A stretch of DNA of 64,000 bases, taken from Convolutriloba macropyga. Its lineage: Eukaryota. The position numbers and the translations under genes were made by a program. Below, one piece after another: positions 1,186-28,100 of this stretch (position 1 is the first letter of the stretch; each line of letters starts with the position of its first letter). Below the pieces are notes generated by a model. That model searched no databases. It was not told the DNA's origin and saw only the letters and a program-made list of their open reading frames with translations. The stretch lies in NCBI RefSeq assembly GCF_964194025.1, contig NC_134468.1, positions 87,792,001 to 87,856,000 of the forward strand, written 5' to 3'.

Positions 1186-4100
1186 CTGTATAGATCCCTC
1201 ATGACGAATTTCATTTTTTACTACTTTTTTACTTGGTTTTAACGTGCAATGTTTTTTTTTTACTTTTTAACATAATTTTACATAATTTTTACATAATTAC
1301 AATGTTTTTATGTAAATATTATGAAATTCTCTTTTTTCCGACAAGTCATATACATAAATTTTCATATAATTGCCAATTTTTGGTTAATAATGCTAATTTT
1401 TGCAGTTGAATATAATTGAGTTTGATACTGTTTTCTATATGACGTATCTGAAGATTTTGAATATGTGTGCAATATCAGCTCGCCAACGAAGGTTAATGAG
1501 TTGGTTTGAAAGTTTTGGGGTGAAATTGTATCCAACTTTTTTTCAATTAGTATTTCCATCATTATGTTTCCATTACTTATCGAACCTTGAGCAAGGCCTT
1601 ACAGAATCCAAGCCCAGTCAACATTCACATTTTTCAAACATTTCTGAATAATTAATGTCAACTAAAATCAGCGAATCAGGGACAAATGTTTACAAAACTG
1701 ATAATACTCACAGTAAATCACAGATAAAACAGAAAATCAATGTCAAACTGCCGCATGTGAACAAAAAACCATAAGCGTGAAATTGAAATTTAGTTCAAAC
1801 AAAAAACTAGGCCTAGAATGAACTATAAATTGATTGGGAAAACCACTTACAAAAAAATCCGGTCCAAAAAATCGAAAAAAAAACTGTAAAAATCAAAGTG
1901 AAATTGCCGCATGTGAACAAAAACCACTAGCGAGAAAGCGAATTTTTGTTCCAACACCATTTTCTCACTCTACTTTAAATTTAGAGCAAAAAAATTTCAC
2001 ACCGCAAAACCACTCGCTTTTTTGGTCCACTTCCGGTATCGGCGTTACCAAAATCACTACTCCAATTTGACTTCAAAAATCTTGAAAATGTGTGAACAGA
2101 TCTTTAAAAAAAGACACCGCCCCAATACAATTCAAATTCTTTGAATTGTAACAACCACGATGTCACCAATAATAGCCGCTATCGCTTCGCGGCTATTGAT
2201 AAAACTGATAATACTCACAGGTTCTTTATGTTTATCTTTCTTCTTATCGTGGTCCGGGTCATGAGATGATGGTTGTTTTTCTGATCCATACTCGTTGTAC
2301 ATTACGACCTCCTTAGATGAGTCGCTGTGACTACTCTGGTCTTTACCCCTGTCGTCTTTCTTCTTCTTTTCATCCGCGGAGTAGTAAACCTTGTATTTGT
2401 GCCCACCATCTGCGTCATAGGCGTAATAGTAGCCACCTGAACCAATTAAGCACCATTCAAAAATTGAAAAGAGATCAATTTAACTGTTTCGAACAAGAGA
2501 TTTCGAGATCCGCAGTCACTTTTACAGTCGCAATAATTTAAAGTCCCAATAATTTAAAGTCCCAATAATTTAAAGTCCCAATAATTTCAAGAAGAATGGG
2601 ACCCGAGTCCCGAAAACGACAAGTCATTTGAAAAAAATCAACGCTATGTTTGGTTTCAAACCTAAGAAAGCTTTGGAATGGTCGGTTTCATCGGTTTCGT
2701 CCAAAAAAAAGGTTTGGTATGAATAATTTTAGAACGTAAAAAAGCTTCCGTGTGTTCGGTTACAAAAGGAAAAAGTTGTTTTTAATTCCATACTATTACT
2801 TTTTTAAAATAAATACGCGGAAATTCCAAACTTGCATCTCGGAGAATTTTGTTTTCAGAAAATGTGCGAATTTATTGAAATTTTATTAGCTCGATGACAA
2901 AACTAGTCGAAAAAAGATTTTTTTTATTTAGTTTAAGCTAAAAGATGAAACCAACATGTTAAACAAACATAACCGACTATCATTCGGCGAATTGTTCTCA
3001 AAAGATTGGCAAGCGGTTTGCTTCAGTAGAAGCCGGCTAGAGCTTAGGGCTGCTAGCATGCTAGGGGTGTCAAGCAATAGGGGGAGATATGGTTGGTAGG
3101 GCTGTACAAGAAGGGGGTCCAAATTGCCAGGTGGAGGATGGTGAACGATGGAGCGCTGTGGATGCGGGATGCGAGTGGGGGTGAGTGGCTGAGTGTAGCG
3201 GATGTTAAGCGAGTGTATCACTCTTGCCGCTCTTCACACCAACAAATTTGCTCCTCAAAACAGTTTCAGTGAATCTCATATTTAAAAACTAGTATGACAT
3301 AAGGCTCTAAGAGAGTTGCAAAGCCACATAATGCATTCCGGGCGTTAACTGTTTATCTCCCGCTTTTGAAGACAAAAATTTAAAAAGGTCAGACGAAAAT
3401 TCTGTCAAGCGAAAAACTGCATAAAAAGATTGCAGGGCTAATATAATTGCAAAATACTTTGTTGGGGAGCAATTAATTAATTAATGGCGATGCATAGGTG
3501 TAAACCGGGTTAGGAACAATTAATCAAGGGATTCAATTCACTAATTATTATTCACCGAGCCTTGATATGATTAGGAGAAAAAAATTAAATAAATTGTTTT
3601 TCTATATTTTTAAGACTATAAAAACATACCAATGACACCGAAAAAACTCAACGAGGAACTTGAAATTTTTTATGTTTGAAATCTATATTTTCTATATTTA
3701 AAATGTGTATTTTCTATAAGTTTTCTATGTTTGAAGCCTAAATTGTCTGGTGTAGGGAAAGAATTCTAAAGAAACCTGTCTTTTTCCTTCCATCACTTTT
3801 GACACTTCTAAAATTAAATTAGAGAAAGACATGAGAGTAGTGGTATTATTCTAAAACCCTTGTGGCGCGCTCATCAATAATTTCTTTGATTTATCCAACC
3901 GACATTTAGTTGAAGTTTACCAAAAATTTTCTTCATTTTTTAAAAAAATGGGCAACGTCAAACTCATGAAATAATATGGAGATACGGATATGGAGAACTT
4001 TTTCTGAATTTTAGATTTTTTTTTGTGAATTCTGCAGTAATTCAAAAAATGGTTGCATAGAAAAACATTAAATTTTTTGTTTTTCAAACCTTTTTTATTT

Positions 4101-7100
4101 AACATTAGTTTTTTTTCAATTTCTAGTATGTCGAAACATTCTGGTTTCTGACAATGTTTAATTTCAAATAAATTTTTAATGGCACTAATAGTAAAACTGT
4201 TGAATTTCAAAAGTTTTTTTATAAAAAGATATGTTATTTTACAATATCAATTTTATTCCAACAAGCAGGATTTACTTTTAGTTCAATCATTTGAACGTTT
4301 TGTTCATTAATCAAATAATGATAAAAAATGTCTTAAAAATGTTTGAAATTTTTTCCAAATATTAATTTGAGGCACATAAATGTTTTTTTTTTCAACTTAA
4401 TAAAACGTAATAAGTAGCTGATATAAGTAGGTTACTGATATGCTGCTGGGATCAACAGTCCCAAATTTAAAAAACTCAAATATATTTATATGCAAAATCA
4501 CAAAAATCACATTTTTTATATAAAATAATATGCAAAATTTATGAAAAGTGAATTTTTTGGTTTTTACGGGCTGCGAATCGAAGTGGAGCTGAGTCGCTAT
4601 TGGCAAAATTCTTGCATTTCATATTTTTGCGGTTTTGCCTACTTTCAAAGCTTTAAACATTTTATTATCAAAGGCAAACCCTTTTTCGTGATTCGACGCA
4701 CTTTTAATTTGCCAACAAAATTAATGTCAAATGGTAAATTTAAACTATCAACTAGCTTTTCTTGCTTTTTGCAGTCATTTTACATTGATTGTCACTTTTT
4801 CTCATTTTATCTAAAACGGCAACCTTCAGTGGACAAACTTTTTTAATCCTTTCCAACTTTAGTGGGGGAGAGGAACTACATTTTCAAATGTTTTTTTTGC
4901 TTTGTCAATTTTCGCCGATAGATATATTCATCGTAGAGAGATTTGTGTGGTATCATTTAAAAGCCCGTCAAGTGTAACAAATAGAATTAAAATGTTTTTT
5001 TCCGAGTTCTGTTTTTGCCAAGTAAAAATTGAGGTTTACAGTTTTGTGAGTAAAAGACCAATTACCGTTGTTTTTGTTCATATTTTTTTGTCATTTTAGC
5101 CTAATTTTTTTTTATTAATATTGCTAAAAATTGTTCAAAATCACAAGAATAGTGTTATTTTACCAATAAGGACAGAGAAGGGTTGCTGAATAGTTTGATT
5201 CGAGTTTTTTGTTAAAATTTAGCTTTATTGTTCGAAGTTCGGACTTTCTCATCAAAAATGTTGTCAAATATGCTCTCAAAGCCCATTTTTTTTAAGTTTG
5301 CCAGAAGTAGAGACCTGAAAACTGCTAACAGAATCATTTCACCTGCAGAAGAGGGCTATTTCTGTTCAAACTTCCTACAAAGAACTCCTTTAATTAAAAA
5401 ATTGGCCGGTTTTCACTAATTTAACTCGTATGTATACAAAATGCATCGTTTGTATTTGATATTGAAAGATTTCATTCGCCTAATTGTTTTTTTTGCTGAT
5501 AATTGGAAAAATTAGAGGGTTAGTGGGACCTGCAGCTACATCAGGGCTAGCTTTGTTCTCTTTGTCGAGTCTTATAGTCTAAAATTCGTTTGAAATATAG
5601 TGGGCCGCGATCTTTTTTTTTGGGAAAATTATTTGCAATTTTTAGTTTGCCTTTTTTATGTTAATTACTCAATAAAATGATTTCATAGTAATATCCAATT
5701 GAAGCAAGCCCCCTTTAACATAAAATGAGCTCCAATGAACACAAGATATTAGCTTTTGAGTTTGAGTTCATGTGTATTAAGACTCCGACAAAACGTTTTA
5801 AAAAATTTCAACTGAATTCTTGTGTTTTGCTTGCACTTACTGTTCATTTTGCAGGTTCATGAATTAGTCTCACTATATAAAAAATTTATTTAGCTGCTGT
5901 GTTTGTTAGAATCATAACAATAGCGTGTTTTCAATTGATATCTAATGGCTTTCATTACTTTGTACTTATTTGTTTTGCAAAAATAAGAGTGAAGTTCTGA
6001 ACTGTGCATCATTTATATCATCTGTAGCCTAGTCTCGGTAAAAAAGCTCATACATTTTTTCATTTGAAATAGCATTTTGTTTCCGTAAGGGTTCTAATTT
6101 TTAATACCGTTTCTCGGCTTTGGTAATACCATTTTCCTAAAAACGTTTTGATTTATTCATGATTGCCAATTTTTGAGGTTCAATTTTGTTTGCTTAGCAA
6201 TTCTCTTTATTGAAAAATCTAAGTGACGTCTAAGAAAAAGCAATGAAATTTTTTCAATTTTCTTGATGAATGTATTATGGTTTTGACTGCTGCGACACTG
6301 TTCTCTCGTAAATTTTTCAAAATTTTAAATTTTTACAATTGTTTGTTGTTGTTTTGTGGTTGTCAAAAATTTTTTTTAGCTCATCAAAAGTCTCAATTGT
6401 TTCCCTTGAAAATTAGAAGGGGCAAATTCATTAATTTCATTTTGTAGATTTTGGACTTAATGACTTTCATATAAATCATTGTCTAAAAACAAATGGGAAT
6501 TTGATGTTCTTGATTTTTTCTTGCCTCGAAATGATCATTCTTATTTCCATTATTGATCGGTCTTACCACTTTTTTGCTGAAGCAATTATTGACTAATTTG
6601 TTGTTTATTTTATTCAACTCAAGTTTATAGGGCTAAGACCATTTGTTTTTAAAAGAACTTTTATGAGTTCTCAGAAATGGTCATTGATTCATGTTCGTTC
6701 GTCTTTTTCACGTAGACCCTTTACAAAGAGGACGATTGATTATCAACTGAGATGAGAAGCAAAAAAATACCTTCAGACCATCACACTCTTAATTGTTTTT
6801 GATATCTCACAGTTTTAATGGCTTCAATACTGTGGTTTCGGAGATTAGTTCTTTTAATTTTGAGTTCTGGTCATGTTCATTGTTTTGTGAAGTCTTATTG
6901 CTTAGTCTCATTCAGAACACTCCGAATTTTACAACAACGGAGTTAAAGATTAAATTGTTTTCTTTTTCTTGTCTGTTGAAAGCTAATTGTTTTCATGATA
7001 TTTAAATAAAAAATCAGCATTATAAAATAAAATAATGATTCAGCTTTTTTAATTTTTAGCTTCTTTCGTTTAAAGGTGGCTTAGTCTCTGTAAAGACAGG

Positions 7101-10100
7101 CCGTATTTTCTTTCCAGAGAATCAAGGAGCAGTTTTGTAATTGATTTATTATCAAATAATGGTCTCTTGGCTTTGATACTACGCATTTTTATTTGAAAAA
7201 TGCCGTTTTAGTTATATGCGATATCTGAGTGTTGAAATTGTTCTTTGTTTCCTGGCCGCAACAACTAACTAATCGGAGTTTTTCGGGCTTTGACAGAATG
7301 CAAAATTGATTTTATATTGCTTGTAGTGAATTTATTACGATATATCGGCTGTGACAAGGTTTTCCTGCTAAATTTTTTTGTTTGTGCACTCTGCCCTTTC
7401 TGCAATTATTTTTCTAATTGTTACGATGTTTCATTAAGGACAAGTTTCATATCTATTTAGCGATGTAGAGGTCAATTTGTTTTTTTAGGCGTTATCTAGT
7501 GCCATTTTCATTTTGTGATTTGGTTTTTTATCAACGTTGACATCTAGTATTTTTTGTTTTTTTTTATTCTTCATATCTCGTATTTTCATCATATGGAAAT
7601 ATCAATCTTCTAATGCGGCATTACTTTCATTTAATGGTTTGTTGAACAATATAGAAATCTTTGAAATTTCCTATCTCTTCCGGTTGAATAGACCATTAGG
7701 TCAAATATGCACATGAGCGGGGTCGGAACATTACGTGTAAAGTCACATTACCGAGCATCCGCGTCTCATTTTAAACGCTTTTTCCGATTCCACTAATTTT
7801 CAGATCACCTTTTTAAACAAATAAGAAAAACATAGCCGGAAAATTGCCGAAAATAGCGGCAATTGCTTGTTTGCTTCCATGAATCAAAACAACTAATAAA
7901 ATAATATAGACAGATTGACCACCAGTCATTAATAGACCAACGGAATTTTTGGTTAGATCCGGCTGTCATTTTTAAGTGACATATAGACTCTTTGAGGATA
8001 AAACACTGATGAAGTTTTGTCAAAACTAATATTTCAAATACAGAACTCAAGTCTCTTATACTCAATAATTGGTTCATATACGTTTGACACTACCTAGATG
8101 CACACTATTGACCTTTAACTAGTAAATTCTCATAAAATTTAAAGTTCCAGAAATGAATTCAAAAGTCGTTTTTAATTGAGTTAACTCACACAACTGAACT
8201 TAAAGCAGAATGATGTCATGCACACAAACATTAACTGCAATGCACTAGAAGTCACTGCAGTTATTGAAAAAGTCAATTCCAAGAAGTCATGTAGTAAGAA
8301 TTGCCGATGGAGACGACGAATTAAAAAAACATAGAAGGACGAGTCCAGAAAAACAATTGAATAAATTGTTTGACAAATTTAGAAGTGCTTTAGCAGACCA
8401 CCAGAACAATTGAATAATGCCAGCCAAAACACAAACAAAATCTTTTTCATTTGAAAGAATTGAGAAACTGAAACAATCAAACAAACTAAACAAAAAAATA
8501 CTCAATGCCAAAACTCTTGAAGCTTTTACCCCGCGGGTAAAATTTGATCTTATTAAATGCACCTATTTCAAAAATATGTTCAGTTTCAATTTGTCTCTGA
8601 AATAGGCAAGGATTATATCTGCAAGACATGAAAAAAACTCATTGACTCTTGGTGATCGATTAACTCAGAAAATGGAAGACGATTTTTTTTTTAAAAAAAG
8701 AAATTACAAATTCTAAAGAAATTTTGCCAAAAATTGTGATATTAATATTATCAGAATCCTATCTTTGTCTCTAGAGGCAATCCAGTAACCCAAATCCAGG
8801 CCTTTAGAATTTCACTGGCTCGTTCTGGAAAACTATTCCGCTGCCCCCTACGAAAGCTAGCAACTGTGTAACAACAGACTATGTAACCCTGGAGAAAGTT
8901 ACTTAACTAAACCGGCAAGAAAAACTTAATAAAGACAATGTTTTTAAAAAAATGCAAAGTTTATCAAATACTTCTAAAATTCCAATGTTAAATTGTAGAA
9001 AAAAATTTTCTAGACGTTAGCAACTATGAAGTATCTTTTTATCAGACGGTGGAAGAAGTTTTATGTCACTTGAGAATGGACAAATATCAAAAATCGACGA
9101 AAATTTTAGGAAAACTTAAAAAAATGACAGACTTTATGAAAAAATTTTATTATTGGAAACATTAAAGAGTTGAAAATTTTTCCATTCTTACTAGAAACTA
9201 CGCAGTGACCTATTACCAAACCCTAAAGGAAAACTTTCAAAAAACTTGAAGAAAAAGCAAAAATTAGTATCATTTTGAGTTTTTGTGTTTGTAGTACCCT
9301 TACATACAGCTCAAAGAATGCTCATAAAAAGTAATTTTTTCTCGCAAATGACCTTTATCAGCATTGGAAAACTTCAATCTAACTGCAATAAAACATAAAA
9401 CTAAAAAAAACATGAAAAATTGCACCATTTTGAGCCCAAAAACTCCAAAAATTGACCTTTTAAACTTAGATTGATGCCATCTGGGCAGCTTTATTTTTCT
9501 GAGTTTTTCGACGACAAATAAAACCTACTCTGAACCTCTAATGAAACCTGATGCCCGCTTGGCTTTTCCTGATTGTCCCGTTTTGAAATATCAAAGTCAT
9601 TGAAAAGTGTGTGAAGACATCTAAAAAAATATACCAGGAAAAGCCTTTAGGCAAAATTCATGTGAATGTATTATTTATAATCTGACACCAATTACTCCAC
9701 TTTAAAAGGCAAATGAGGGCTGTTAGTGCTGAGACTAAAAATTTCAAATTTTAATTTTTCAAAAAGACAGGATCAACATAAAAAAACTGCTATTAAATCA
9801 AACAGCCAACTTTATTTCTCTTTTGCTCAAGAGCAACCTGTCAAAAATTGTCAATTAGTCTCACTAATAACATTAAATGATAAGACAAAAATGACCAAAA
9901 TTGCAATAAAACTCGCTGAAGCTTTTTGAAAATATTTGGTATAAAAGTCACAGAACGCAACAGCTACTGAAGGATTCAATTGCATCAATTAATTGAGTCC
10001 CCCAATGGCCACAATTGAGACCTATCATCAATTAGAGTAAGTGATATCTCAACAATAGTTATGCTAGTTTTTTTATCTCAACAATAAAAAACTAGCACAA

Positions 10101-13100
10101 CTAAAAAAATTCACGAAGATTTTATTAAGAAACAAACAAGCGTCCTAGTCACAAAAAGTAATAGCTATGAACTGAAATGACTTGTTCTTATTGAAGCCTT
10201 TTTAGCAATCAGTGAGATCTCTCAATTATGAGACTAAGAATTAAGATGACACAGTTGAAAAGAAAAATTCGGAAAACTCCAAATTCGATAGTTTTTAATG
10301 AAAACAATTAGTGTCGAAGTCATAGAAAGCACTAGATGAGAACAAAAACGATTAATTGGACAAACTTTACCCCTATAAGCAGCATCAAAGACTTGTCCTC
10401 AATGAGATTAAATGATAAGACATCAAACAAGTCAATAATTACTTGCAGAACTTTATATTCAAAGAAATAAGAAAAAGTATTTTTGAGAAAAAGTAGTGTC
10501 AAAGTCATGAAAACCACTAGCACCAATACAATTCAATTTGTTTGTTTTGTAAAATTGCAGCGCCACAATACAATTCAAAATTGTTCAATTGTAAAAAAAA
10601 CCTCGATGTCCCCAATAATAGCCTATATCCCTTTGCGGCTATTAATAAAACATATTTCAATACATTTTCTTCATAAATTTTTCTTCCCTCTCAATCGATG
10701 TCACCTCTTTCTAAATATTCTACTTGAAAAAATTTCTGTTTTCGTTGCTGTATTGCATTATCACTGGAACATTAACAGGTAGATCAGAACCCATATCCAC
10801 TTCGGACATGTTTGCTCAATCTATTTTATTTACTAATGCGTTGGTTCTTAATTATTTTTCATCCCCTAGCTAAAAAATGATTCCGTGGCGAAATATACGG
10901 TACATGCCATGCTCTAGCACCCGATATTACGACAATAAATAAAGAAAAGGGTTTCAGGTTCTATCGCCACAAAATTATGTCTCCGATGCATTGGGAAAAG
11001 GTCTGAATGAGTCGAAATTGAAAAGAAAAAATCAACATTCCTTTTTTCTTCTTTGACTTCCTCCTCTTCTCTCCATATGTCTTGTCCCTCTTTTTCTTCT
11101 TGCTTCGATGACGATGTTTCCTACTCTGTTTATGACCTGAAACAGTTCACTATAAATTTTCAGAAGTTGTAAATCAACATTGAAAAGTCTTTTGTTCAAC
11201 CGCTTAAAAACCATGCTCAGCCCAACCTGCTTATAAAAATAGTTAAAACTTCACTCGATCAGTTACAGAGAGTTTAATAGACAAGTCATCACTTAACCCC
11301 CCCCCCCCCCCCCCCCCCCACCTCCACCCTCCCTCACTAAAAAAATGTTTATAAGTAAAACCTGGGTGCTAATAAGAATTAAAAACATAAAACGACTAAA
11401 GTCGGGTGAATTGATCTCGAACAACAGTCGTGGGTTAATTAACTTAGAGGGGTTGTACCTTGGAAAATTTCAATGGGTGCAGAAAAAAACGCACGTACAG
11501 GGGATCGAAATGCTGACCTCCAAATTAGCAGTCCCAAATATTTACCCCCCAGCCACATTATCTTTGACTTCATTTCGCCCATGATCACTTTTACAAACGA
11601 ATTTGAATTGAAAACGAGAGGGACTTAGATGAATCAAAAATGAACAACTAAAGTGTGAAAAAGTCACCCGAAAAATCAAGACACGTTCCAGAACAAAAGT
11701 TCCAGAGGAGAAGTTTGAAATTGAAACGTAAAGAACTGCATAAAATGTTCTTAATGCTATATAACACTGGCTGGGCAATAGCGGAAAATATCTTTAGGTT
11801 CAACTGATCTGTTGTTAAGCTTCACTTTATTTTAGTTGAAAAAATTCATTTCAAGAGAATGAAAACTCGCTGAGCATTACGTTTACTAACCGTGTCCGAA
11901 CGTAATGCTCCTTCCAGTTTGTGCTCAATTAAGCGTATAACAAACGAATGCAACATTAAGGAAAGAAAATTAATTGAGGTTGCTCTTCGTGGTCGATTAC
12001 AGAAAACAAGGTTAACCGGATCTATTCTGTTTCTTGCTCTTTGCTCTTGCTCTTGGAAAATTCAAACCATTGGGTCCTCTTGGAAAATTCAAACCATTGG
12101 GTCCTCATTGGGTCCTACCATTCTCTCATGGGCATTGCGAGACGCAGCTAGTGAATAAGCTGAGCCTATTTGTTTTCTATTGAGTGAGTTTATAAAAACA
12201 GAAACATTCCCTGCTGAACTCGAAAGAGCGGACATCACTCCACTTTTTAAAAAAGGAGACCTTGATGATCCTTTAAACTATCGACCAATTTCGTCAACAC
12301 CAGCATTAGCAAAACTTTTTGAATCTCTTAGTAAACAATAAATTGATGAAAATGTTCATAAGAATGCCCTGCTTTCTAAAACACAGTTTGGTTTCAGAAA
12401 AAAATTTTCTTCAACAGATGCGCTCGTTTATTTAACTGAAAAAATAAAATGCAACAAAAACGAGAAAAAAAACTGCAGCAGCATTTTTAGATCTATCAAA
12501 AACTTTTGAGTCCATTAATCACGAGCTCATGATTATAAAAGCTTTCCATTCTTGGATTTTCGATACCAGCTCAAAATCTATTTATGAGCTATCTTTCAAA
12601 CAGAACACAAAGAGTCATAATCTGTTAGCGCCACTTCAGACCAGCTAGAAAAGCCATCAGACAGCAAGAAATAACTTTTGAAATTGAAAAAACTTAGAAT
12701 TTGTCAAAACTCAAAAATGGTCAAAAAAGAAAAATTTTACAAGTTGGGACCGAAATTCTGTACACCACCCCCCCCCCCAATTTTGGGAAGGCAAAACCCG
12801 AGCAACCCGAGGTTATGGCAGACGGTTAGGGTTACCTCTAAGCTACTCATGGACCCAGCGAACATTATTGCATCAGACCCACAAGTGTGGCTATTAGCAC
12901 TTAAATGGTGCAAAATTGGCATTTTTCGATATTTTGTTATTTATTATTAATTTTCTTAAGTCGTTTATTTTATGATACTTTAGATGATCACTAAAGGTGA
13001 AATACCGTACATTCGAGGCATTTAGAGCCACGTAATAACCATCCCTGCTTATGTCAACAAAAGCAAATATTGCAGTAATTTGACATTTACTATGTAAACA

Positions 13101-16100
13101 ATGACCTAAATCATTTTCTTGATTAACCAATCAAAAACAAGTAGCGATGATGTTATAATTGATAAATATTTGATTATTTACTTTAACCCAATTGTTTGAT
13201 TAGTGAAACCGTATTGTATTTAGAACCATTAGAAACTGTTACCAAGAGCAGTTGGCTCTCAGATTGACTAAAATCTGATTCTTGAACAACTTTAGTCTTT
13301 TTGCTAAGTTTTGCTAGATCTTAAAATCTTGCGAGTTCTAAGTTAGTTGAGCTTACTTAACGAGAAGTTAGCAACATTACTAACACTTGTTGAAGCTTTA
13401 CGAACTTCAGCACAAGATTGAACATAGACTATCACTAAGGATTTACTTAACTTCAATCAACAAAATTAAAGTTACAGTCCTTTATTACGTCCGAACGACT
13501 CATTATTTGTGCAAGATGGTTAGTCAATCGAACCCAGTGAAAAACCAGGCCGGCTTAAAACTCGAGAACCAGGCTGTGATATATCGGTTCCGCTAAGATT
13601 CTTGAGCAGCCGCAACATTTGTTCCGCTGACCCGGACAACAACAACAGCAGTGTCACGAACAGCAACAAATCTTCGATTCAACCTGGTGGACCAAAACAC
13701 AACCAGCAACGATGGCCAGCAAAAGTCCCAACAGACACTGGAAGACAGCTGATTGGAAGGCAAGTGGTCAACTCAGGACATTAGAGAAAGAGCAAGCTGA
13801 CCTACTCAAGTCCTTCTCCAGACACCTCAACGAGCTAGAAGGCTACCTGACACAAAACAAAACAATGACGGCCGAAGGTGCTTATCGATGTTTCTTCGAG
13901 ACGTACAACAGCTTGGAAGACAACAGAAAACAGCAAGGTTACTATTAAAACCAAAGTATTTTGAAAACTTTGACAATGACACCAAGCGTATGTTAGAAGA
14001 AAAGAGTAAAGTTTTGCGATGGGTAGTTGACAAAATACCAGATCTCCAAGATATTGAAGATTGTCGCGCAGTAGTCGTCGACTACCGGAAAAACACATTG
14101 CGATGGTACAATAAATTGGAAGATTCTGTTCCAATCGAGAACGAATTGGTAGAACTCGAAAAGAATTGGTAGAACTCTTAAATCAGAAAATTTAAGCGAC
14201 TCTGAAAAACAGATACTGTGCGATCAGGCGGAACGGTTATTAGAAAAGCGAGATGAAATTTGCGCAGAAGCTATTTCAATATTGAAGATAGAAATTGTTC
14301 CCATGGGTTTGCGAAATTCAGTAAAGCTAGGAGTCACAATCAGGACCTGCTCAAACAGTACAGGCTCAGCAAGGATTGTGGAAACCAAACATCGTTAGTG
14401 TCAACTACATCGACTGGTGACAAAGACCCAAACGACGAAACTGTAATTGATACAAGAAAGGGAGCAATAGAAAACGCTGAGGAGAACGCGGAGGTCTCTT
14501 CCATGCATTCTGCTACACATGGAAGCCGAAAACAACCCAGTATCGCCGACTCGCGATCATCAAAGAGGCGAGAGATCGAAGAAATGGAGCACGAAAACTT
14601 GAAAGCAAAGAGAGAAAAAGAGCAACGACTGCTAGAGCGCCAGTTGGAGTTAGAGCGGGAGCGTGAAGAAATAGAACTTCGTCGCCAGCAAGAAGAGTTA
14701 CGTTTACAACAGCAACAACAACAACAACAGCGGCGAGAACAAGAGTTACAACAACAACAAAGAGAACAAGAGTTACAACAACAACAACAAGAGCAAGAGT
14801 TACGTCTAAAGATGCAACAGCAAGAAGGTGAACTGCGTCTTCGACAGCATGAGCGAACACTTGAAAACGAAAGAAAGAAAGCAGAAGAAGAAGAAGAAGA
14901 AGAAAGACGTATGAAACTTGAGCTGATCAAAGGAAGCTCAAGAGCTTTTGGATCAGTTGCAGATGAGATAGACAGTGTTGGATCAAAACGAACTCACGAA
15001 GGAAGAGCCGGGTGGGCAGAATCAGTGGCTCAACAGTCTGTCCCTAGACGGCCACTATCTCCAAATCTTGTTATCGACCCTCCAACGAATGTCACCAAGG
15101 ACAGAGCTGACAAACGTTTCAGCACCTACCCGAAAACTACCCTGCTGTTCCAACCAGGCGAAAGACTTTTTCAAAGCAACTGGCTGAACCGAGTTTTCTC
15201 AAGAAACCAGAAGTCCGTAAACCAATTAGAGTAACGGACCCACCAGCACCACCGTTGACAAAGCCGACGTTTCAGCAGCAGGGAACGTCAGCAGTTCAAA
15301 CTAAAAACAGGAGTCAGAGTCCCATTAACAACTCTCGAAACAGGTCTGCCGAGAATAGAAAAAGGAGCACAATGAATCACACCACTCCCCAAGTCATTTA
15401 CCAACCAGTACCAAGCAGTGGTACCAGTGGCTTGCCAGAACTAAAACTGACTGACTTTTCAGGAGATCCTCTGGAGTGGTCAGAGTGGTCAGGTCTCTTT
15501 GATGTTGTTGTTCATCAAAAGCCAATCAGCGATACAGAAAAGATGCAATACCTGAAGATCAGTCTCACGGGTCAAGCGAAAGCAGCAATATCAGGAATGG
15601 GATTCAGCTCACGATCATACTATCATGCTTGGGAAAAACTCTGTGAGAAATATGGCAGATCAGATTTCATAGTCAACGCGCAATTTAAGAAAATACATAC
15701 TCATCCTCCAGTTCGACATGACGATTCTACGGGCATCGTCAAATTCGCAAGTTTGGTTACAAATGTGGTAACACTTTGACTCAACTTGGATACACATCCG
15801 ACCTAGAATTAGAAGGAGGGCCAAGCTCAACAACGAGAAAATTTTCTCCGCAACCGAGAGAACAGTGGTTGCAATAAATGCAAGATCGTCGACTACTGAG
15901 AGGCAATCGGATTTTTTTCAAAGAGCGGCTGGCCTCCAAAGCTGTAATTCATAAGAACCTGTTAGCACAGACAAACTCGTCATTTGACAGAAACAAATTT
16001 CAAAGCCGTGATAAACTGAAGACGAGTACTTTTTCTTCAAACGCTGAAGAGTCAAGCAAATCCAAGAATTTTGAATGTCCCTTCAAATACAGACAACATC

Positions 16101-19100
16101 CTATTGGGGCGTGTGAAAAGTTTAAATCACAGAAAGTAAATGAACGACGAGAGCATGTCCAGAAGTTTTGACTGTGTTTCAATTGTTTGAAACCAGGTCA
16201 CATGTCGAAGGACTGCAGAAGCAGGACATGCAGTGTACCCAGCTGTGGAAGGCGACACAACAGGTTTTTGCACAGCGACCTACCGAAGGAGGAAACTACA
16301 AAGAATGTCTCAGATGCTACAACAGCATTAGCAACTAACATCACCCAAGGAGGACTCCCAGTGATACGAATCAAGCTGACAAACAGAGACTTAAGCCTAA
16401 ATGTACTAGCAATGTGTGATTCGGGATCCTCAATCTCATTTGTAGACAAGTCAGTGGTGTCAAAACTCCAACTCCAAGGCCGAAAAGCATATCTATCAGT
16501 AGCAGGGATCCATGGATCACAGGATGTAAAGACTGAAATAGTGTCGACAGCTGTGTCAGCCCATGAGAAGTCTCGACCATTGCCAACAGTGCAATTCTAC
16601 GTTCACGAAAAACTGAAATTGGGTGACCAGATTGTAGAGCTGCAAGAGTTGAAAGACCATTACCCACATTTGAGAAATTTGCCAGATCAGAGCTACAATC
16701 TAAACGATGTTCAGGTGATTCTTGGACAAGATTGTTACGATAATCATCACTCTTTTGAATTCAAGAAGTCAGAAGACAAAACTGCACCATGGGCAGTGAA
16801 ATCGAAGATCGGCTGGGCCTTAAGTGGTCCGCAACTCTTGCCACAACAGCAACATCAATTGCCGATGCCAAACTAGCAAACCAGTTGAGTAAGTGGAGGG
16901 ATATCGAATCCTACGCTTCAAACTGCGATGTCACCGGTCATTCGAAAGAAGAACAACGAGCGATCAAGACCTCGGAGCAAACAACTTGATTCAATGGTGA
17001 AAGATACGAAGTTGGACTTCTGTGGCAAGAGGACGAAGTGAAGTTACCGCACAACTTTTACTCTGCAATGGGGCAGCTCAAGTCCCTGGAACGACGCCTA
17101 CAGAAAGACGAGACGCTACGAAAGCGCTATCAGAAAACCATTGACACGGATGTCAACGCTGGATACGTTCGGAGAGTAGATCAAGCTGAACTGAATGAAA
17201 CAAGAGACAAACTGCAATGGTATTTTCCACATCATCCCATCATACACCCGCACAAACCCGAAAAAGTTGGAAGAGTGTGCAACAAATGACAAACTTCTAC
17301 TTTGGCCAGACCTGTTGCAGAGTCTTATCGGAATTATTTTTCGCTTCCGAGAACACCAAATAGCTTTATCAGCCGACATAGAAGCGGTTCAGCGAAACTT
17401 CTACATGGACGATTTCCTCAAGTCAGTCAGAAAACCTCAAGAAGCGATTGAAATCTACCAGAAAGTCAGAGAGATCCTTAACAAAGTTGGATTCAAATTG
17501 ACGAAATGGATAACAAGTGACGATGAAGTCAAGTCACAAATCCCAGAGACAGACAGGTCAACGAAAGTTGTGAAAACTTTCGAAGCAGAACCACAATTAT
17601 CTTCAATCCTAGAACTCAACTGGAATGTGGACGCAGACAGGCTTATAGTCTGTCGTGAAACTGAGCAAGAAGTTCCACCAAAAATAACTCAGAGAATTGT
17701 CCTATCCTTTGTCTCAGCAGTGTTCGACCCACTTGGGATATGTTCACCCTTCACCATACGAATGCGATTTCTACTCCAAAGCATTTGGGCAGCAATGGGA
17801 CACGCATGGGACAAAGCTTTGTCAGCAGAACACTCAAAACTGTCCAGTAATTGGTGCTCTGAGTTGAGGGAAATAAGAACCATGTCAATAAATCGACTTT
17901 ATTTTGAAAACGGATGCACAAACCTGAGACTTCACATCTTTACAGATGCATCAGAGGAAGCGATGTGCATCGTGGCATATCTGCAAAACATAGCAACGTT
18001 GAAACTTTTATATGTGGTAGGGAAATGCCGTGTGGCACCCATTAGACATATGACAATACCGAAGTTAGAACTTCAAGCCGCAGTCTACGGAGTTCGGCTC
18101 AGAGAGCAGATACTTAATAATGAACATGATGTCAGAACTGACAAAATCTATCTTTGGACCGACTCATCAACAGTGCTACAGTGGCTAAAGGCAGCGCACA
18201 AGAAACAACAAGTATTCGTTGCGAACAGAGCAGCGGAAATACTGGAAAACTCATCGATGGATCAATGGAGACACGTCAAAGATGCGAAAACCCTGCCGAC
18301 ATTGGAACCCGAGGAATGTCTATCGAAGGGCTCAAAGAGTCCGTACGGCTAAACGGGCCGGCATGGCTCCAGGCAGATGAAGAAAAGTGGCCCAAGCCGT
18401 GGTGCCAAGATAATGAACTCGAACCTGAGCAAGTTATGAGTACTGTAGCAACAGAAAATAAACTAGACCAACTGTTTGACTGGAGACAATACAGTTCCTT
18501 CTGCAAGACAAAACAGAAGGGTACCCTCAAAGCAGACGAAATTCATCACGCAGAGCAAATACTGTTTCGGTTTGTTCAAACCGAAAGCTTCCCGAATGTT
18601 TCGAAGTCTATAGCAAACAGCAAAGAAATCTCCAAAACTTTAAACATTGCCAAATTGTCGTCCTTCATAGAGGAAGATTGAACAATTAGAGTGAAAAGCC
18701 GACTGAAGCATTCAAACCTTGAATACAATGCAAAACATCCAATATTGTTAACAGCAAAACATCCAGTTGTACAACTTCTGTTGGAAAGAGCGCATCGAGA
18801 CAACCTAAATGAGGGCACAGAATACGTGAGAAACATGCTCCAACAAGAATACTGGATCATCGGGCTGAGAAATGCATTAAGAAAAATCAAGTCAAGATGC
18901 ATCAAGTGCAGACACAGAAACGCCAACCCAATTCATCCAGCGATGGCAGATCTAACCCGAGAACGACTTGACGAACATGTGTTCCCATTCACTCATAGCG
19001 GATTCGACTACTTGGGAACCTTCGAAGTCAAGTTCCTACGACGTACCTTGAAAAGATGGTGCTGCCTTTTCACTTGCCTGACAACCAGAGCAGTACACAT

Positions 19101-22100
19101 CGAAGTCGCACAGTCATTGGACACCGAGTCATGTCTAGCTGCAGTGACAAGAATCATTGCAAGACGTGGCTACCCAAGTACCATCATCAAAGACAAAGGA
19201 AAAAATTTTGTTGGAGCAGCCAATTAGCTGAAATCATTCATGAACTAGTGGGACAAAGCAAAGATTGAGAGTGACTTAGCACAGAAAAAGATTGTTTGGA
19301 AATTCAATTCTCCCGGAGCTCCTCACTTTGGTGGAATCTGGGAAAGTGGGAAAGACTGGTTCAAAATTGCAAGAAGGTCATGATTGCAATCTTGGACCAC
19401 AGAAGCCTCACCGACAAGGTACTCAGCACAACAATGTGTCTTGTAGAGCAGACTCTCAACGCAAGACCCCTGACAGCAGTAAGTGACAACCCTGAAGATT
19501 TGACAGCACTCACAACTAATTATTTCTTGCTAGGACAAGAGAACGCGAGTGCACCTTTCATGCCATCCAGTGAACGCTACCATGACCTGAGAAATTCTTT
19601 CAGAACGGTTCAAGCATATGGCGACATGATCTGGAAAGGATGAACTCGTGAAAATCTTCCACAATGGAACCAGAGATCGAAGTGGTCAAAAGAACATGTG
19701 CGAAACATGAAAGAAGGCGAGTTAGTGTGGCTAGTAGATGACTCTGTGAAACGCTGTGAATACAAACTTGGACGAATCATTGAGATCTTCACTGGCAATG
19801 ACGGAGTTGTGAGATCAGCGAGAGTCAAAATGGCACATGGAGAGCTAAACCGGCCAGTCGTGAAGTTAGCGCCAGTATTCTACGATGGTATTTCCGAGAT
19901 CGAAAACAGGGCCGGCGATTTTGGCGCAACTTCAGATCAGCTAGAAAAGCCATCAGACAGCAAAAAATAACTTTTGAAACTGAAAAAACTTAGAATTTGT
20001 CAAAACTCAAAAAAGGTCAAAAATGAAAAATTTTACAAGTTGGGACCGAAAATCTGTACATCCCCCCCCCGATTATGGGAAGGCAAAACCCGAGCAACCC
20101 GAGGTTATGGCAGACTGTTAGAGTTATCTCTAAGCTACTCATGGACCCAACGAACATTATTGCATCAGACCCACAAGTGTGGCTATTAGCACTTAAATGG
20201 TGCAAAATTGGCATTTTTCGATATTTTGTTATTTATTATTAATTTTCTTAAGTTGTTTTTTTATGATACTTTAGATGATCATTAAAGGTGAAATACCGTA
20301 CATTCGAGGCATTTAGAGCCACGTAATAACCATCCGTGCTTATGTCAACAAAAGCAAATATTGCAGTAATTTGACATTTACTATGTAAACATTGACCTAA
20401 ATCATTTTCTTGATTAACCAATCAGAAACAAGTAGCGATGATGTTATAATTGCTAAATATTTGATTATTTACTTTAACCAAATTGTTGGATTAGTGAAAC
20501 CGTATTGTATTTAGAACCATTAGAAACTGTTACCAAGAACAGTTGGCTCTCAGATTGACTAAAATTTGATTCTTTAACAACTTTAGTCTTTTTGCAAAGT
20601 TTTGCTAGATCTTAAGATCTCGCGAGTTCTAAGTTAGTTGAGCTTATTTAACGAGAAGTTAGCAACATTACTAACACTGGTTGAATCCTTACGAACTTCA
20701 GCACGAGATTGAACATAGACTATCACTAAGGATTCTCTTGACTTCAATCAACAAAATTAAAGTTACAGTCCTTTAATACGTCCGAACGAATAATTATTTC
20801 TGCGAGATCGTTAGTCAATCGAACCCAGTGAAGAACCAGGCCGGCGTAAAACTAGAGAACCAGGCTGTGATATATCGGTTCCGCTGAGATTCTTGAGCAG
20901 CCGCAACATAATCAATAATGTTAAATCAGGGTCAAATGAAGTGGCTCAAGGAGTTCCCTAAGGAACAGTCTTGAGTCCTCTCTTGTTCAATCTATTTGTT
21001 AACGATCTTAACAACTTTTTGTCATGTGAAACAATACAATACGCAGATGACACAGTCCTATTAAGCTCTCATGATGAAGCTCTCAAATGCAAAGACGAGC
21101 ATGAGAAGGCCATAGAAAAATGCATACAATATTTTCAATTACATCACCTCAAGATCAATCAGGATAAAGCAGAGTTTATTAGTTTTGGTAGCTCGAATCC
21201 TCAAGACGAAACGACATTAAAAGTTTGAGACAAATTATTAAGTTCGAAAGCGGAAATCATATATCTCGGTGTTTTTCATGCAAATTGAATTTGGAAATTG
21301 TCTGGGTAAAAATTTTTTGAGTTCACTCGTGTAGACAAAAACCTGCGGTAGTTAATTTCAAAGCTGAGTTTGAGAAGGCAGGCTTCTTTTTATTCATAGT
21401 GCCGTGACAGTAAGTTGCAGCCCTGTAATCAAAAAGGTAGTATACCAAGGTTCATTTTAAGGTCTGAGGATGAGTCAAACTTTTGTCTGTAAAAACTTGA
21501 GGTGATGTAATTGACAAAGACCTCAAATATCAAAAACAAGCAAAAATTCTTTTGTCAAAATGGCCCAGGGCATTAAATGCATATATGTACTCAGGAACAT
21601 AATTCCCACTGTATACAACAAAAAGTATTTTGAATTCTTTTGTTCTCAGTCATGTTCAATATTCTTCTGTATTAATTGCAACCATCAATCAAAATCTCAT
21701 AGCAACACTAAAAGCAGTTGAATTGGGCCGTCAAAGCTTGTTTTCACAGACAAAAGTTTGACTCATCCTCAGACCTTAAAATGACCCTTGGTATACTACC
21801 TTTTTGATTAAAGGGCTGCAACTTACTGTCACGGCATTATGAATAAAAAGAAGCCTGCCTTCTCAAGCTCAGCGATGAAATTAACAATCGCAAGTTTTTG
21901 TCTACACGAGTGAACTCAAAAAATTTTTACCCAGACAATTTCCAAATGCAATTTGCATGAAAAAAGTAATAATAAAAGAGGTATTCTGCAGCACAATTCT
22001 TTCCCAATAAAATATTTGTCAATGTCATACAGTCTTGCAAAGAAGAAATATAAGCAGTTTTTCCTTAATGAATACAAGAAGGTTGACAACATGGACACAA

Positions 22101-25100: not shown

Positions 25101-28100
25101 TACTGCCTTGGCGATAAGTACGGGTGGTTATGACTTGCCTAGAGCTCGGCAAGGAATTTGACCAATCATTGCAATTGATGTACATCATTATAAACTTGTA
25201 ATCGTGTCAATTATAGATGGGTATGTTTCAACAGGGGAGGGGGGGGTTCGAAATGGTGAAATATATGAATCATACCTTCAGCGTCCTCTGTATAATCAGC
25301 ACCATATGCTTGTGTCTCGTCACCTGATACATACAGGGGTTGACCTCCACCCTCTTTTCCCTCTTTTTTGCTCCTTCTCCTGTGCCTCTTCTCTGTTGCA
25401 GTGTCTTCCCCTGAGGCATCTGCCGAGTAGTACCTGCCGCCCCCCTCGGGACTCTCCTCTTTGTCTTTGAGTGGGCCGTACTTCCTACGATGCTTGCGAC
25501 CGCTTTTTCTTGTCTCATTCACTCCTTCTTTGTTATCCTCGTCAGGCTGTTTAACTGAAACAAGGAAAACCTCTACAGTGACGTGCACCCCCCTAAACAC
25601 ACACCCACACACACACAACAAACACACACACCCACACACACGCACGCACATCATGATAAAATTTGAGATGTTTTTAAGAGTATAACCGGGGGTTAATGTC
25701 AAGGGGGCGCATCATTGTTCCAGTAGAGAAGTGGGTGCGGAGGATGGGGTCGAGGTAAAAAATTAAATTTACTTGGGAGGGTGGTCAAAAATATGTAAGA
25801 GATGAAAAGCAATGATGGATTTCCTGCAAGAGTTATGAGTAGGATAATTAAAGAAAATGAAACGAAAGACACTGTATTATTCCTATGATCTCCGAGACAG
25901 ACAGTGCTAAATAACAGTAATAAAAACCAACAATTCTGGCCCAAAGTGATCAGAGTCTGTTCAGTTAGGCCAAGAAACTGTCTTGCATCTGTTCTGTCTG
26001 TCCTAATCACCTCAGACATATTTGGTCTGGATCAGGGTCTGAGTTGGATCTTTTCATTCTGGGCTCCCATGTAGGTAGACTAAATCCTTCTGGCCCATAT
26101 CAGCTCATTATGGGTTCTTCAAATCAAGTTAATACAAAACAAATTAGTATAAATGTGAATTCAACTAATATACGGCTTGGTAAGATAATCTTGGTCGACT
26201 TTATTAACTCATTGACATGCTATTACTTGTCAGTTTAAAGACATAATCCAAGTTTGGAATCACAGCAATACTCGGATTAATGGCCCCTCGCCACTCTGAT
26301 GATGATTTATTATGTGAATCAAAACCCACACAATCGGGTTTTCAAATTAATATAAATTAGTTTAAAATCTGTTTTTATGGGGAAAATAACCTTTATCAGG
26401 GGTTTCTTCATAAACTTCTTTTTGAGTTTCAGCTTCGTAGAAGACTCCCTCATTGCCCACTTCTGCGTCAGTGACCCCGTAGGCACCCTCCCCTGCTCCT
26501 TCCCCATATTTGGCCTCTTCTGCTTTTTCCTCAAACTCTTTTCCATATGTTCGGGTACTGCTGCGTTTCTTCCTCCCTTTCTTTCCCTTCTTATTCTTCT
26601 CCTCGCCTCCTGGGACAACATAAAAACAATTAGATAAATTAAAATTAAATTATATAAATTTGGAAATTCGAACTTAAAAATTAAAATTATAACTTGAAAA
26701 TAGGAACTTGAAAACAAAATTATATAAAATTGGAACTTGGAACTTAAAAATTAAAATTGGAACTTGAAAATTAAATTATATGAAATTGGAACATTACATA
26801 ATTAAAATTGGAACTTGTTGTTTACTACGACGAAAGAAAATTGTCGAAACAACTTTTTACTCGACCGTTTTGACTTCTGACATTTACGCCCCTGGGTATT
26901 TTGCGAGAAATTGAAGGAAAAAGGTTTGTTTCTTATCATTTTTTGCGTATAGAATGATCAGAAACAAGCAATTTTCCATGGATAAAATAGCCTGGGAACT
27001 TTTAAATTTGGCATATTATTCCACTCAATGCAACTATGGTACCGTAGTTGCAATGAGGTGGAATAACATGCCAAATTTAGGAGTTCCCACGCTGTTTTTC
27101 TCGAGAGTTATCCCCATAGTTAGACTCTTTTTGGTGGCACTCTGAGGGTAGAGTGCATCCCAAGTTATGTGATGCGGAAAAAGTTGATCATTAAGTTGAA
27201 GTGAATTGTTGATTAAATCGTTTCGAAAATAATCTGACCATAAATCGTACAACAGTCAGATAAGAAACAAAAGTCTCGGAAATCATCCAAGTATAAGTCG
27301 CAAAAAACCCAGAGGTTAACACGTTCATCAAGGTGCTTCAAATGACGTCATTAAAAGTTTTTACATACCACTAAAAAGATTGAAAGTGAAAGAAACGGCA
27401 CCAATTTTGGCACCAACTTTGATTTCAATACCACCAAATGAGTTCAGCTGCTCAAAATGAGAGAAAAATTGTGATCACAAAAACGCAAATACTCAGGGGC
27501 GTAAATGTCAGAAGTCAAAACGGTCCAGTAAAATTTGCATAGAAAAGACGCACACGGAATTCTGCCCTCAGAGCTGCGGACGGTAAGAAATAATAAATAT
27601 TATAAAGATACATCCCAACAGATTGCCGAAGGAGCTCCTGACTAGACTTACGTGATGTAGAATATAGATGAAAACAGACAGAGAATTAAATTTATTCAGC
27701 TGCAAACATTTTTAAAGAGTGAAATAACAGCTTCGCAGCTATAAATTGTATAAAAGTTCGAGTAACTTATATTCGGATAATTGAGTGTGCCTATAATTTT
27801 TTTTGTAATTTGAAGCCTGTTGTGTGGTTCCCTTGAAGATAAGTCAATGTATATTAGTTGTATGTGGTGTTACTTCAGGAATTCTTGATGGTTGAGTCAT
27901 TGTTTGCACCATTGTGTACCAAGGCTATGAGTCTGAGTTTTATGCTGTTTTCCTTTTTTACAATTTTCTCATTTTTTCTAATACAAGGCAATTTTGCTCT
28001 CTGTAGGATCCGTTATAAAAATTTGAATTCTATCTGGACAAAAACGTTGGCCTCGAGGATAAAAAAGATCGCGGATATACTTTTATGACCAAGAACCGCC

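What the first reader, a model, noticed from the sequence alone, without database searches (positions are those of the whole stretch)
11031..11050. Probable non-canonical GA-AG intron of 8.6 kb
Seen: exon 6 needs a phase-1 donor. Exon 5's Lys-rich sequence ends exactly at AAG AAA AAA G|GAATGT. This matches a strong donor (AAG|GTATGT) at every position except +2 and makes the exon 96 nt and symmetric like exons 3 and 4. The nearest GT (AT|gttgat) is weak and in phase 2, and read-through gives hydrophobic residues and then a stop. Established: GA-AG introns are rare in most animals but are reported in a few lineages such as larvaceans and some copepods. Inference: this genome may tolerate GA donors even in long introns. 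Alternatively this is a T>A allele causing in-frame exon skipping, or a sequencing error.
Basis: partly seen in the sequence, partly recalled or inferred. Interest (0 to 1): 0.75.

Follow-up and report, generated by a model that had tools for sequence, protein, structure and literature searches.

The report
Probable GA-AG intron in acoel gene
A small lysine-rich exon of an orphan gene in the acoel worm Convolutriloba macropyga is present in RNA and stops matching the genome exactly where the intron starts with GA instead of the usual GT, so this is probably a rare but known kind of odd intron rather than an error.

Summary
On the minus strand a 96-nt phase 1-1 exon (11136-11041) has a clean tttcag acceptor and is followed by G|GAATGT. 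The next in-frame exon (2436-2219) lies 8,604 nt downstream.

New evidence:
- One RNA-like public run has a 201-letter contig matching 11040-11138 with no mismatch. It leaves the genome at both exon borders. At the 3' border it leaves at +2 (11039), as the junction ...AAAAAAG|GTGGCT predicts. So the exon is expressed, and this contig does not use the GT at +5.
- DNA contigs from two other specimens list no difference at 11039. The other haplotype carries a 2-nt insertion that destroys the +5 GT.
- Apart from +2, the site scores above 73% of 56 real donors I read in this genome.

Limits:
- The downstream partner exon was not read, and the genotype of the RNA animals is unknown.
- My census of 55 conserved-gene introns gave 54 GT, 1 GC and 0 GA, so general GA tolerance is not shown.
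- The intron ends do not pair, and no U1 variant compensates for +2 A.

Other windows of this scan already noted non-GT donors in this genome.

Verdict: probable genuine GA-AG intron (about 0.6), a new member of a known kind, of moderate interest.

The parts
11041..11136 (-). 'Exon 5': a 96-nt phase 1-1 coding exon, (G)HKQSRKHRHRSKKKKRDKTYGEKRRKSKKKK(G)
   Evidence: Sequence. Run X5 contig record 23 lies on 11040-11138 with 0 mismatches and 0 gaps, and departs from the genome on both sides. The [KR]xYG motif is shared with exons B and C.
11035..11040 (-). Proposed 5' splice site AAG|GAATGT (+1 G at 11040, +2 A at 11039). The weak alternative GT is at 11036-11035.
   Evidence: No difference is listed at 11039 in DNA runs X1 and X2. 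One haplotype has 2 nt inserted behind 11035, which removes the +5 GT. The position-weight score without +1/+2 is 5.95 bits, above 73% of 56 real donors. AAT|GTTGAT scores -2.67, below all 56.
2437..11040 (-). Proposed GA-AG intron of 8,604 nt, holding decayed repeats
Evidence: Coordinates. High-copy repeat depth at 9300-10667. The intron ends do not pair beyond chance.
2437..2470 (-). 3' splice site region ...tgcttaattggttcag| with a candidate branch point TTAAT
   Evidence: Sequence.
2219..2436 (-). 'Exon 6': 218 nt, (G)GYYYAYDADGGHKYKVYYSADEKKKK...KHKEP, followed by the donor CCT|GTGAGT
   Evidence: Only one frame is open. It is single-copy in the genome.
25276..25554 (-). Exon C (279 nt, phase 1-1), donor GAAG|GTATGA. 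Probable upstream partner of exon 5.
   Evidence: The X5 contig match runs 2 nt past the acceptor (to 11138), as expected if the exon before it ends in ..AAG.
26391..26609 (-). Exon B (219 nt, phase 1-1), donor AAAG|GTTATT
29307..29554 (-). Exon A (248 nt), donor GAGG|GTAAGT. A possible start ATG lies just upstream.
12740..20611 (.). Probable LTR retrotransposon inside the 14.1-kb intron between exon C and exon 5
   Evidence: Near-identical ORF pieces at 12940-12740 / 20232-20020 and at 13320-13186 / 20611-20477, with higher GC at 14-20 kb.

Best explanation
The 8.6-kb interval 11040-2437 (minus strand) is a genuine U2-type intron with a GA-AG boundary, in an orphan low-complexity (Lys/Arg/Glu/Tyr-rich) gene of the acoel Convolutriloba macropyga. 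Exon 5 is included in mRNA. Its 5' splice site AAG|GAAUGU is recognised by ordinary U1 and U6 pairing because every position except +2 fits the local consensus: exon-end AAG, +1 G, +3 A, +5 G and +6 U. The intron is then joined to the ordinary pyrimidine-tract/CAG acceptor of exon 6, which keeps the frame (...KSKKKK-G-GYYYAYD...). All flanking exons are phase 1-1, so skipping exon 5 would also keep the frame. Like most described GA donors, it may therefore be used alongside a skipped isoform. Shown: the GA in DNA, the exon in RNA, and its two borders. Inferred: the partner exon, how efficiently the site is used, and that the RNA animals carried GA.
For:: run X5 has no depth over the unique intron bins (10668-11009, 11238-11351, 11466-11579). 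It has one 201-letter contig that fits 11040-11138 perfectly. A further 100 letters beyond 11138 and 2 letters beyond 11040 do not fit the genome. That is the behaviour of spliced RNA. The break at 11039 and the 1-nt overhang G are what ...AAAAAAG|GTGGCT predicts (G matches g; T and G mismatch a and a).

The same call excludes read-through to the GT at 11036-35 in that contig, and shows no expressed piece at 10765-10705.

One search also shows DNA contigs of two further specimens (X1, X2) covering the site. Neighbouring heterozygous differences are listed (11035 +TT, 11145 G>C, 11171 +AATT), but none at 11039 and none inside the exon.

with +1/+2 left out, the site scores above 73% of 56 donors read in this genome. 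On the other haplotype it scores above 57%. The rival GT scores below all 56.

exon 5 and exon 6 are single-copy, so the contig comes from this locus.

(PMC5714493): working GA donors in Eurytemora need an exon-end AG and +3 A. Both are present here.

(PMC13650328): the genome animals come from the Bergen laboratory culture of a species that buds asexually. This makes a shared genotype with older laboratory RNA plausible, but that is an inference.
Against: The junction itself was not read. The two contig letters beyond 11040 were not shown, and the contig ends there. No transcript-derived protein spanning the junction exists in the protein collections. The RNA run is from another sample and year, so its genotype at 11039 is unknown. 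The table of differences is truncated, so 'no row at 11039' is strong but not absolute. GA donors were 0 of 55 in my census of conserved genes, so the prior in this genome is low for ordinary introns. None of the 20 U1 loci read has the A7-to-U change that would pair with +2 A.
Confidence: 0.6

Rival explanations
1. T/A polymorphism. The animals behind the RNA run carried an allele with the canonical G|GTATGT and spliced it normally. In the GA/GA genotype of the reference animals, exon 5 is skipped in frame or poorly spliced.
For: The RNA run (X5; sample S4, study P2, 2016) is not from the genome specimens. An mRNA reads the same whichever allele produced it. Heterozygosity is high at 3.65%. 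GA donors are 0 of 55 in my census. Skipping keeps the frame because all these exons are phase 1-1.
Against: Both haplotypes seen in two separate specimens list no difference at 11039, while intron differences around it are listed. The exon shows no listed difference between haplotypes, although the flanks carry many. That fits continued selection on an exon that is still used. The culture is largely clonal. The X5 contig is 99/99 identical to the reference.
Confidence: 0.15
2. The GA donor is real, but the intron is not the one drawn. Exon 5 is joined to another downstream exon that also starts with G followed by a base other than A, or exon 5 ends a minor or aberrant transcript.
For: Only one matching letter (G) and two mismatching letters constrain the partner. 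The contig stops 3 nt past the exon. The 8.6-kb interval is full of repeats that could supply cryptic exons. No downstream exon beyond exon 6 was found within 20 kb, so the gene's 3' end is poorly known.
Against: Exon 6 is the only open, compositionally matching exon downstream. It needs exactly phase 1 and begins GTG, which fits the match/mismatch pattern. X5 shows no unique-sequence depth between 10668 and 11009.
Confidence: 0.12
3. Artefact. The X5 contig is a chimeric or mis-assembled de Bruijn path, or the GA is an assembly error shared through common data.
For: There is a single contig of modest depth (7.9). Logan contigs can join paths. Runs X1-X4 belong to the genome project itself, so they are not fully independent of the assembly.
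Against: Both contig break points fall on the predicted acceptor and donor to the base. The acceptor is a perfect tttcag. X1 and X2 are different specimens, with 32x and 54x word depth across the site.
Confidence: 0.05

Closest known systems
GA-AG introns of vertebrate FGFR1-3 and the few other human GA donors (Brackenridge et al. 2003 and Parada et al. 2014, both as cited in PMC5714493)
   Same: It is an isolated GA donor in a genome that otherwise uses GT. The rest of the site is near consensus (exon-end AG, +3 A, +5 G). It sits at an exon whose skipping keeps the frame, so alternative use is likely.
   Different: Here the intron is long (8.6 kb) and full of repeats. The gene is an orphan low-complexity gene. 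Neither conservation in relatives nor efficiency of use has been shown.
Common GA/GG donors of the copepod Eurytemora affinis (PMC5714493), and the G-non-T donors reported in larvaceans (from my own knowledge, not checked here)
   Same: The donor has the form G|GA with an obligate exon-end AG and +3 A, followed by an ordinary acceptor.
   Different: In the copepod these donors make up about 10-12% of introns, including introns of conserved genes. In this acoel I found 0 GA/GG among 55 introns of conserved genes, so a lineage-wide relaxation is not shown.
Hairpin-ended non-GT introns noted elsewhere in this genome by this scan (s1-250063, s1-263042, s1-217432; unchecked notes)
   Same: Same genome, and non-GT donors with G at +1.
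   Different: Those introns are described as having 5' ends that pair with a segment just upstream of the acceptor. Here the first and last 80 nt pair no better than shuffled sequence (-21.9 against -20.9 +/- 4.1 kcal/mol).

Membership tests
U2-type GA-AG intron | The genomic intron begins with GA, and this is not a sequencing error | tested here: met
   for the sequence. In one search, DNA contigs of two further specimens cover 11039 and list no difference there, while listing neighbouring heterozygous sites.
U2-type GA-AG intron | The intron ends in AG after a pyrimidine-rich tract with a plausible branch point | tested here: met
   ...tgcttaattggttcag|GTGGCT.
U2-type GA-AG intron | The spliced junction is observed in RNA | tested here: inconclusive
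   an RNA-derived contig leaves the genome exactly at +2 and at the acceptor of exon 5. The letters of the partner exon were not displayed, and the contig ends 3 nt past the exon.
U2-type GA-AG intron | The rest of the 5' splice site is near consensus (exon-end AG, +3 A, +5 G), as in working GA donors | tested here: met
   AAG|GAATGT; the score is above 73% of 56 local donors. The criteria are from PMC5714493.
U12-type (minor spliceosome) intron | 5' splice site /RTATCCTT and a TCCTTAAC-like branch site | tested here: not met
   The intron starts GAATGTTG. No ATCC motif is present.
Hairpin-ended non-GT introns of this genome (earlier notes) | The 5' end of the intron pairs with a segment just upstream of the acceptor | tested here: not met
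   the duplex energy lies within the shuffle distribution (117 of 300 shuffles were as good or better); no terminal inverted repeat was found.
Lineage-wide relaxed +2 specificity (Eurytemora-like) | GA/GG donors at several per cent or more of introns, including those of conserved genes | tested here: not met
   55 introns of HSP70, CCT, ATP-synthase/V-ATPase, TRAP1 and iGluR genes gave 54 GT, 1 GC and 0 GA/GG. The sample is small and excludes young introns.
Compensating U1 snRNA variant | A U1 gene whose position 7 (the partner of +2) is U instead of A | tested here: not met
   at least 25 U1 loci exist, and 20 were read. Variants exist at positions 1-6 and 9, but none at A7.

The most novel reading that the evidence does not exclude
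The acoel spliceosome needs only G at +1 when the rest of the 5' splice site is strong. On this reading GA, GG and GC donors are used routinely in fast-evolving or young genes and introns, even across 8.6 kb and without any hairpin between the intron ends. Acoels would then be a further animal lineage, after a copepod and larvaceans, with relaxed +2 recognition.
Probability: 0.2. Interest if true: 0.7.

Novelty: new member of a known kind. Interest (0 to 1): 0.42.

Why it matters
If the junction is confirmed, gene prediction in this newly released acoel genome must allow G|GA donors. Otherwise short in-frame exons like this one will be dropped or mis-joined. It would also give a clean test case of how far a strong surrounding consensus can rescue a +2 A over a long, repeat-filled intron, with no hairpin to help. 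Together with other notes of this scan, it bears on whether acoels have loosened 5' splice-site recognition. My own census warns that any such loosening does not reach old introns of housekeeping genes.

Tried and rejected
1) Transcript-derived proteins across the junction. I searched with the exon 6, exon C and exon 5 open frames against the 5.8-billion-protein collection, and with exon 6 against the 1.84-billion representatives. Only the window's own ORFs came back (P0001, P0002). There is no relative and no transcript.

2) Pfam on exons A, B, C and 6 gave nothing.

3) Paralogous copies whose donors could be compared. Exon 5 DNA and exon 6 protein are single-copy.

4) Run X6 ('RNA?', organism B) laid nothing. 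Run X4 (sample S3) may have been the project's poly(A) RNA run, but I did not lay it.

5) Pairing of the intron ends, as in earlier notes of this scan, was no better than shuffles. A 12-nt direct repeat TCTTTTCAATTT lies near both ends. It scored 24 against a shuffle maximum of 23, which is too weak to interpret.

6) A compensating U1 variant was not found.

7) Genome-wide GA use gave 0 of 55 in my census. Two apparent GA/GG candidates in CCT genes turned out to be GAAG|GTAACG and GAAG|GTAAGT once I read the DNA.

8) I re-read part of the region of note s1-263051 (an iGluR gene). The six introns I could fix are all GT-AG. I did not find that note's non-GT cases in the part I read.

9) Further exons downstream of exon 6. 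None with matching composition lies within 20 kb.

10) Literature on non-canonical splicing in acoels. Nothing was found.

Full report
**What is there.** The gene lies on the minus strand. Reading it and fixing coordinates by script gives five exons:
- A, 29554-29307
- B, 26609-26391 (219 nt)
- C, 25554-25276 (279 nt)
- 'exon 5', 11136-11041 (96 nt)
- 'exon 6', 2436-2219 (218 nt)

B, C and exon 5 all enter and leave in phase 1. The donors of A, B, C and exon 6 are GAGG|GTAAGT, AAAG|GTTATT, GAAG|GTATGA and CCT|GTGAGT. Exon 5 has a clean acceptor (ctgtttcag|GTCATA) and is followed by AAAAAAG|GAATGTTGAT, with +2 A at 11039.

The next GT is at 11036-35 and would leave phase 2. Read-through runs into GMLIFSFQF... 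and then a stop. Exon 6 is open in only one frame, and that frame needs a phase-1 donor. The proposed intron, 11040-2437, is 8,604 nt.

**The protein.** It is an orphan, rich in Lys, Arg, Glu, Tyr and Gly, with a recurring [KR]xYG motif that exon 5 shares (DKTYGEKRRK against RTYGKEFEEK in exon B). There is no Pfam match. No relative turned up in the protein collections, and there is no paralogue in the genome.

**Organism.** The window is C1:87792001-87856000 of an assembly of 1,175,981,408 bases. That equals the 1,175.98 Mb reported for Convolutriloba macropyga (PMC13650328). The specimens came from the Bergen laboratory culture. The species buds asexually, and heterozygosity is 3.65%.

**RNA and DNA evidence.** The only sequencing-run search returned six holders. 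I laid X5, X6, X1 and X2 on 9300-12700.

X1 and X2 are two specimens of the genome project. They cover unique intron sequence evenly, at word depths of about 32 and 54, so they are DNA.

X5 is a different study from 2016, labelled 'DNA?'. It has zero depth over the unique intron bins, while repeats reach depths of hundreds to thousands. It has exactly one contig on unique sequence, record 23:
- It is 201 letters long with depth 7.9.
- It fits 11040-11138 with 0 mismatches and 0 gaps.
- A further 100 letters beyond 11138 and 2 letters beyond 11040 do not fit the stretch, although the stretch continues for more than a kilobase on both sides.

That is how spliced RNA behaves. The 2-nt overrun at the acceptor is expected if the upstream exon ends in ..AAG, as exon C does, against the intron's ..CAG. 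The 1-nt overrun at the donor, followed by a break at 11039, is what ...AAAAAAG|GTGGCT predicts against genomic G-A-A.

- Exon 5 is not constitutively skipped.
- This contig does not read through to the GT at 11036-35.
- Nothing is expressed at 10765-10705 in X5.

The fourth condition was a T at +2 in genomic reads. It is not seen. X1 and X2 list neighbouring differences carried by the same contigs (TT inserted behind 11035, 11145 G>C, AATT inserted behind 11171, a 10-nt deletion at 11200), but none at 11039 and none within the exon. The insertion behind 11035 turns the other haplotype into G|GAATGAATTGAT. That removes the +5 GT altogether and leaves the GA in place.

**Limits of that evidence.** The tool did not display the two loose letters, and the contig ends there. 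The partner exon is therefore inferred. The table of differences is truncated, so it is not absolute proof. The RNA animals were not genotyped. An mRNA made from a GT allele would look the same. The laboratory-culture origin makes a shared genotype plausible but does not prove it.

**Strength of the site.** While taking the census below, I collected 56 donors from this genome. A position-weight score over -3..-1 and +3..+6 gives:
- 5.95 bits for AAG|G.ATGT, above 73% of the real donors;
- 3.84 bits on the other haplotype, above 57%;
- -2.67 bits for AAT|GTTGAT, below all 56.

The site also has the exon-end AG and +3 A that Robertson found nearly obligatory for working GA donors in Eurytemora (PMC5714493).

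**Does this genome tolerate GA in general?** Earlier notes of this scan report GA, GG and GC donors in other genes, many with intron ends that pair. I treated these as leads.

For this intron, the first and last 80 nt pair no better than shuffles (-21.9 against -20.9 +/- 4.1 kcal/mol). No terminal inverted repeat exists.

U1 snRNA has at least 25 loci. Of the 20 I read, most start with ATACTTACCTG. Several variants change positions 1-6 or 9, but none changes A7, the partner of +2.

For a census of my own, I fixed intron borders by HMM coordinates and by continuity with orthologues in these genes:

| Gene or group | Introns |
|---|---|
| mitochondrial HSP70 | 8 |
| two other HSP70 genes | 5 |
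| an iGluR gene | 6 |
| five CCT paralogues | 25 |
| ATP5A, ATP5B, V-ATPase A and B | 10 |
| TRAP1 | 1 |

The result over 55 introns was 54 GT, 1 GC (AAAG|GCTAGT in mitochondrial HSP70) and 0 GA or GG. Two seeming GA/GG cases vanished once I read the DNA. GA donors are therefore rare in old introns of conserved genes, roughly under 5% at 95% confidence.

**Conclusion.** The most likely reading (about 0.6) is a genuine U2-type GA-AG intron, used thanks to an otherwise strong 5' splice site. It may coexist with an in-frame skipped isoform.

The main rival (about 0.15) is that the RNA came from a GT allele absent from the genome specimens. Lesser rivals are a different downstream partner (about 0.12) and an assembly artefact (about 0.05).

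GA-AG introns are a known rarity in vertebrates and are common in one copepod. This is therefore a new member of a known kind, in a phylum where I found no published report. This scan has, however, noted such donors on other DNA of the same genome.

Noticed in passing
L006-L009, L015, L016, L018, L021, L022 (U1 snRNA loci of G000): Several U1 snRNA gene copies have altered 5' ends in the stretch that pairs with the 5' splice site. Examples are TTGATTACCTG (four copies with identical upstream flanks)..AAAACCTG, ATTTATACCTG, ATACTAACCTG and ATACTTACTTG. The rest of each RNA scores well above the Rfam cut-off. They could be pseudogenes or variant U1s for odd donors. None pairs with +2 A.
   Followed up: partly
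G000:C5:75865131-75865140 (locus L040): There is a GC-AG intron in the mitochondrial HSP70 gene (GCCAAAG|GCTAGT ... ttgttcag|ACAAGGGA). It is fixed by exact continuity of ...NVHAK-D-KGTGREQ.
   Followed up: yes
window 12740-20611: A probable LTR retrotransposon sits in the intron upstream of exon 5. Repeated ends lie at about 12740-13320 and 20020-20611. The GC-richer interior (14-20 kb) probably codes on the plus strand.
   Followed up: no
window 2160-2200, 10600-10645, 29150-29185; also L055 (a CCT gene intron): A short, very high-copy hairpin-like repeat (AATAGCCGC...GC.GCTATTATTG...) recurs in introns and right after exon 6. Word depth there reaches tens of thousands in the DNA runs (bin 10554-10667). 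It may be the mobile element behind the hairpin-ended introns noted elsewhere.
   Followed up: no
G000: C5:58619057, C10:44361310, C3:72042826, C6:7657230, C5:67869977 (HSP70); C6:35240786, C9:40441724, C5:75033746 (CCT): There are many full-length intronless copies of HSP70 and CCT genes beside intron-rich paralogues. Two CCT copies have identical scores. They may be retrogenes or recent duplicates.
   Followed up: no
window 2521-2585: A tandem 16-nt repeat (TTTAAAGTCCCAATAA, about four copies on the plus strand) lies about 90-150 nt upstream of the exon 6 acceptor.
   Followed up: no
window 11287-11335: A homopolymer run (G on the minus strand, about 30 nt or more) lies in the intron just upstream of exon 5. 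Contigs of all DNA runs break or differ there.
   Followed up: no
window 11035-11211: The two haplotypes differ by several indels and substitutions in the intron flanks of exon 5 (+TT behind 11035, 11145 G>C, +AATT behind 11171, -10 at 11200, -1 at 11211). No difference is listed inside the 96-nt exon. This is a weak hint of constraint on the exon.
   Followed up: partly
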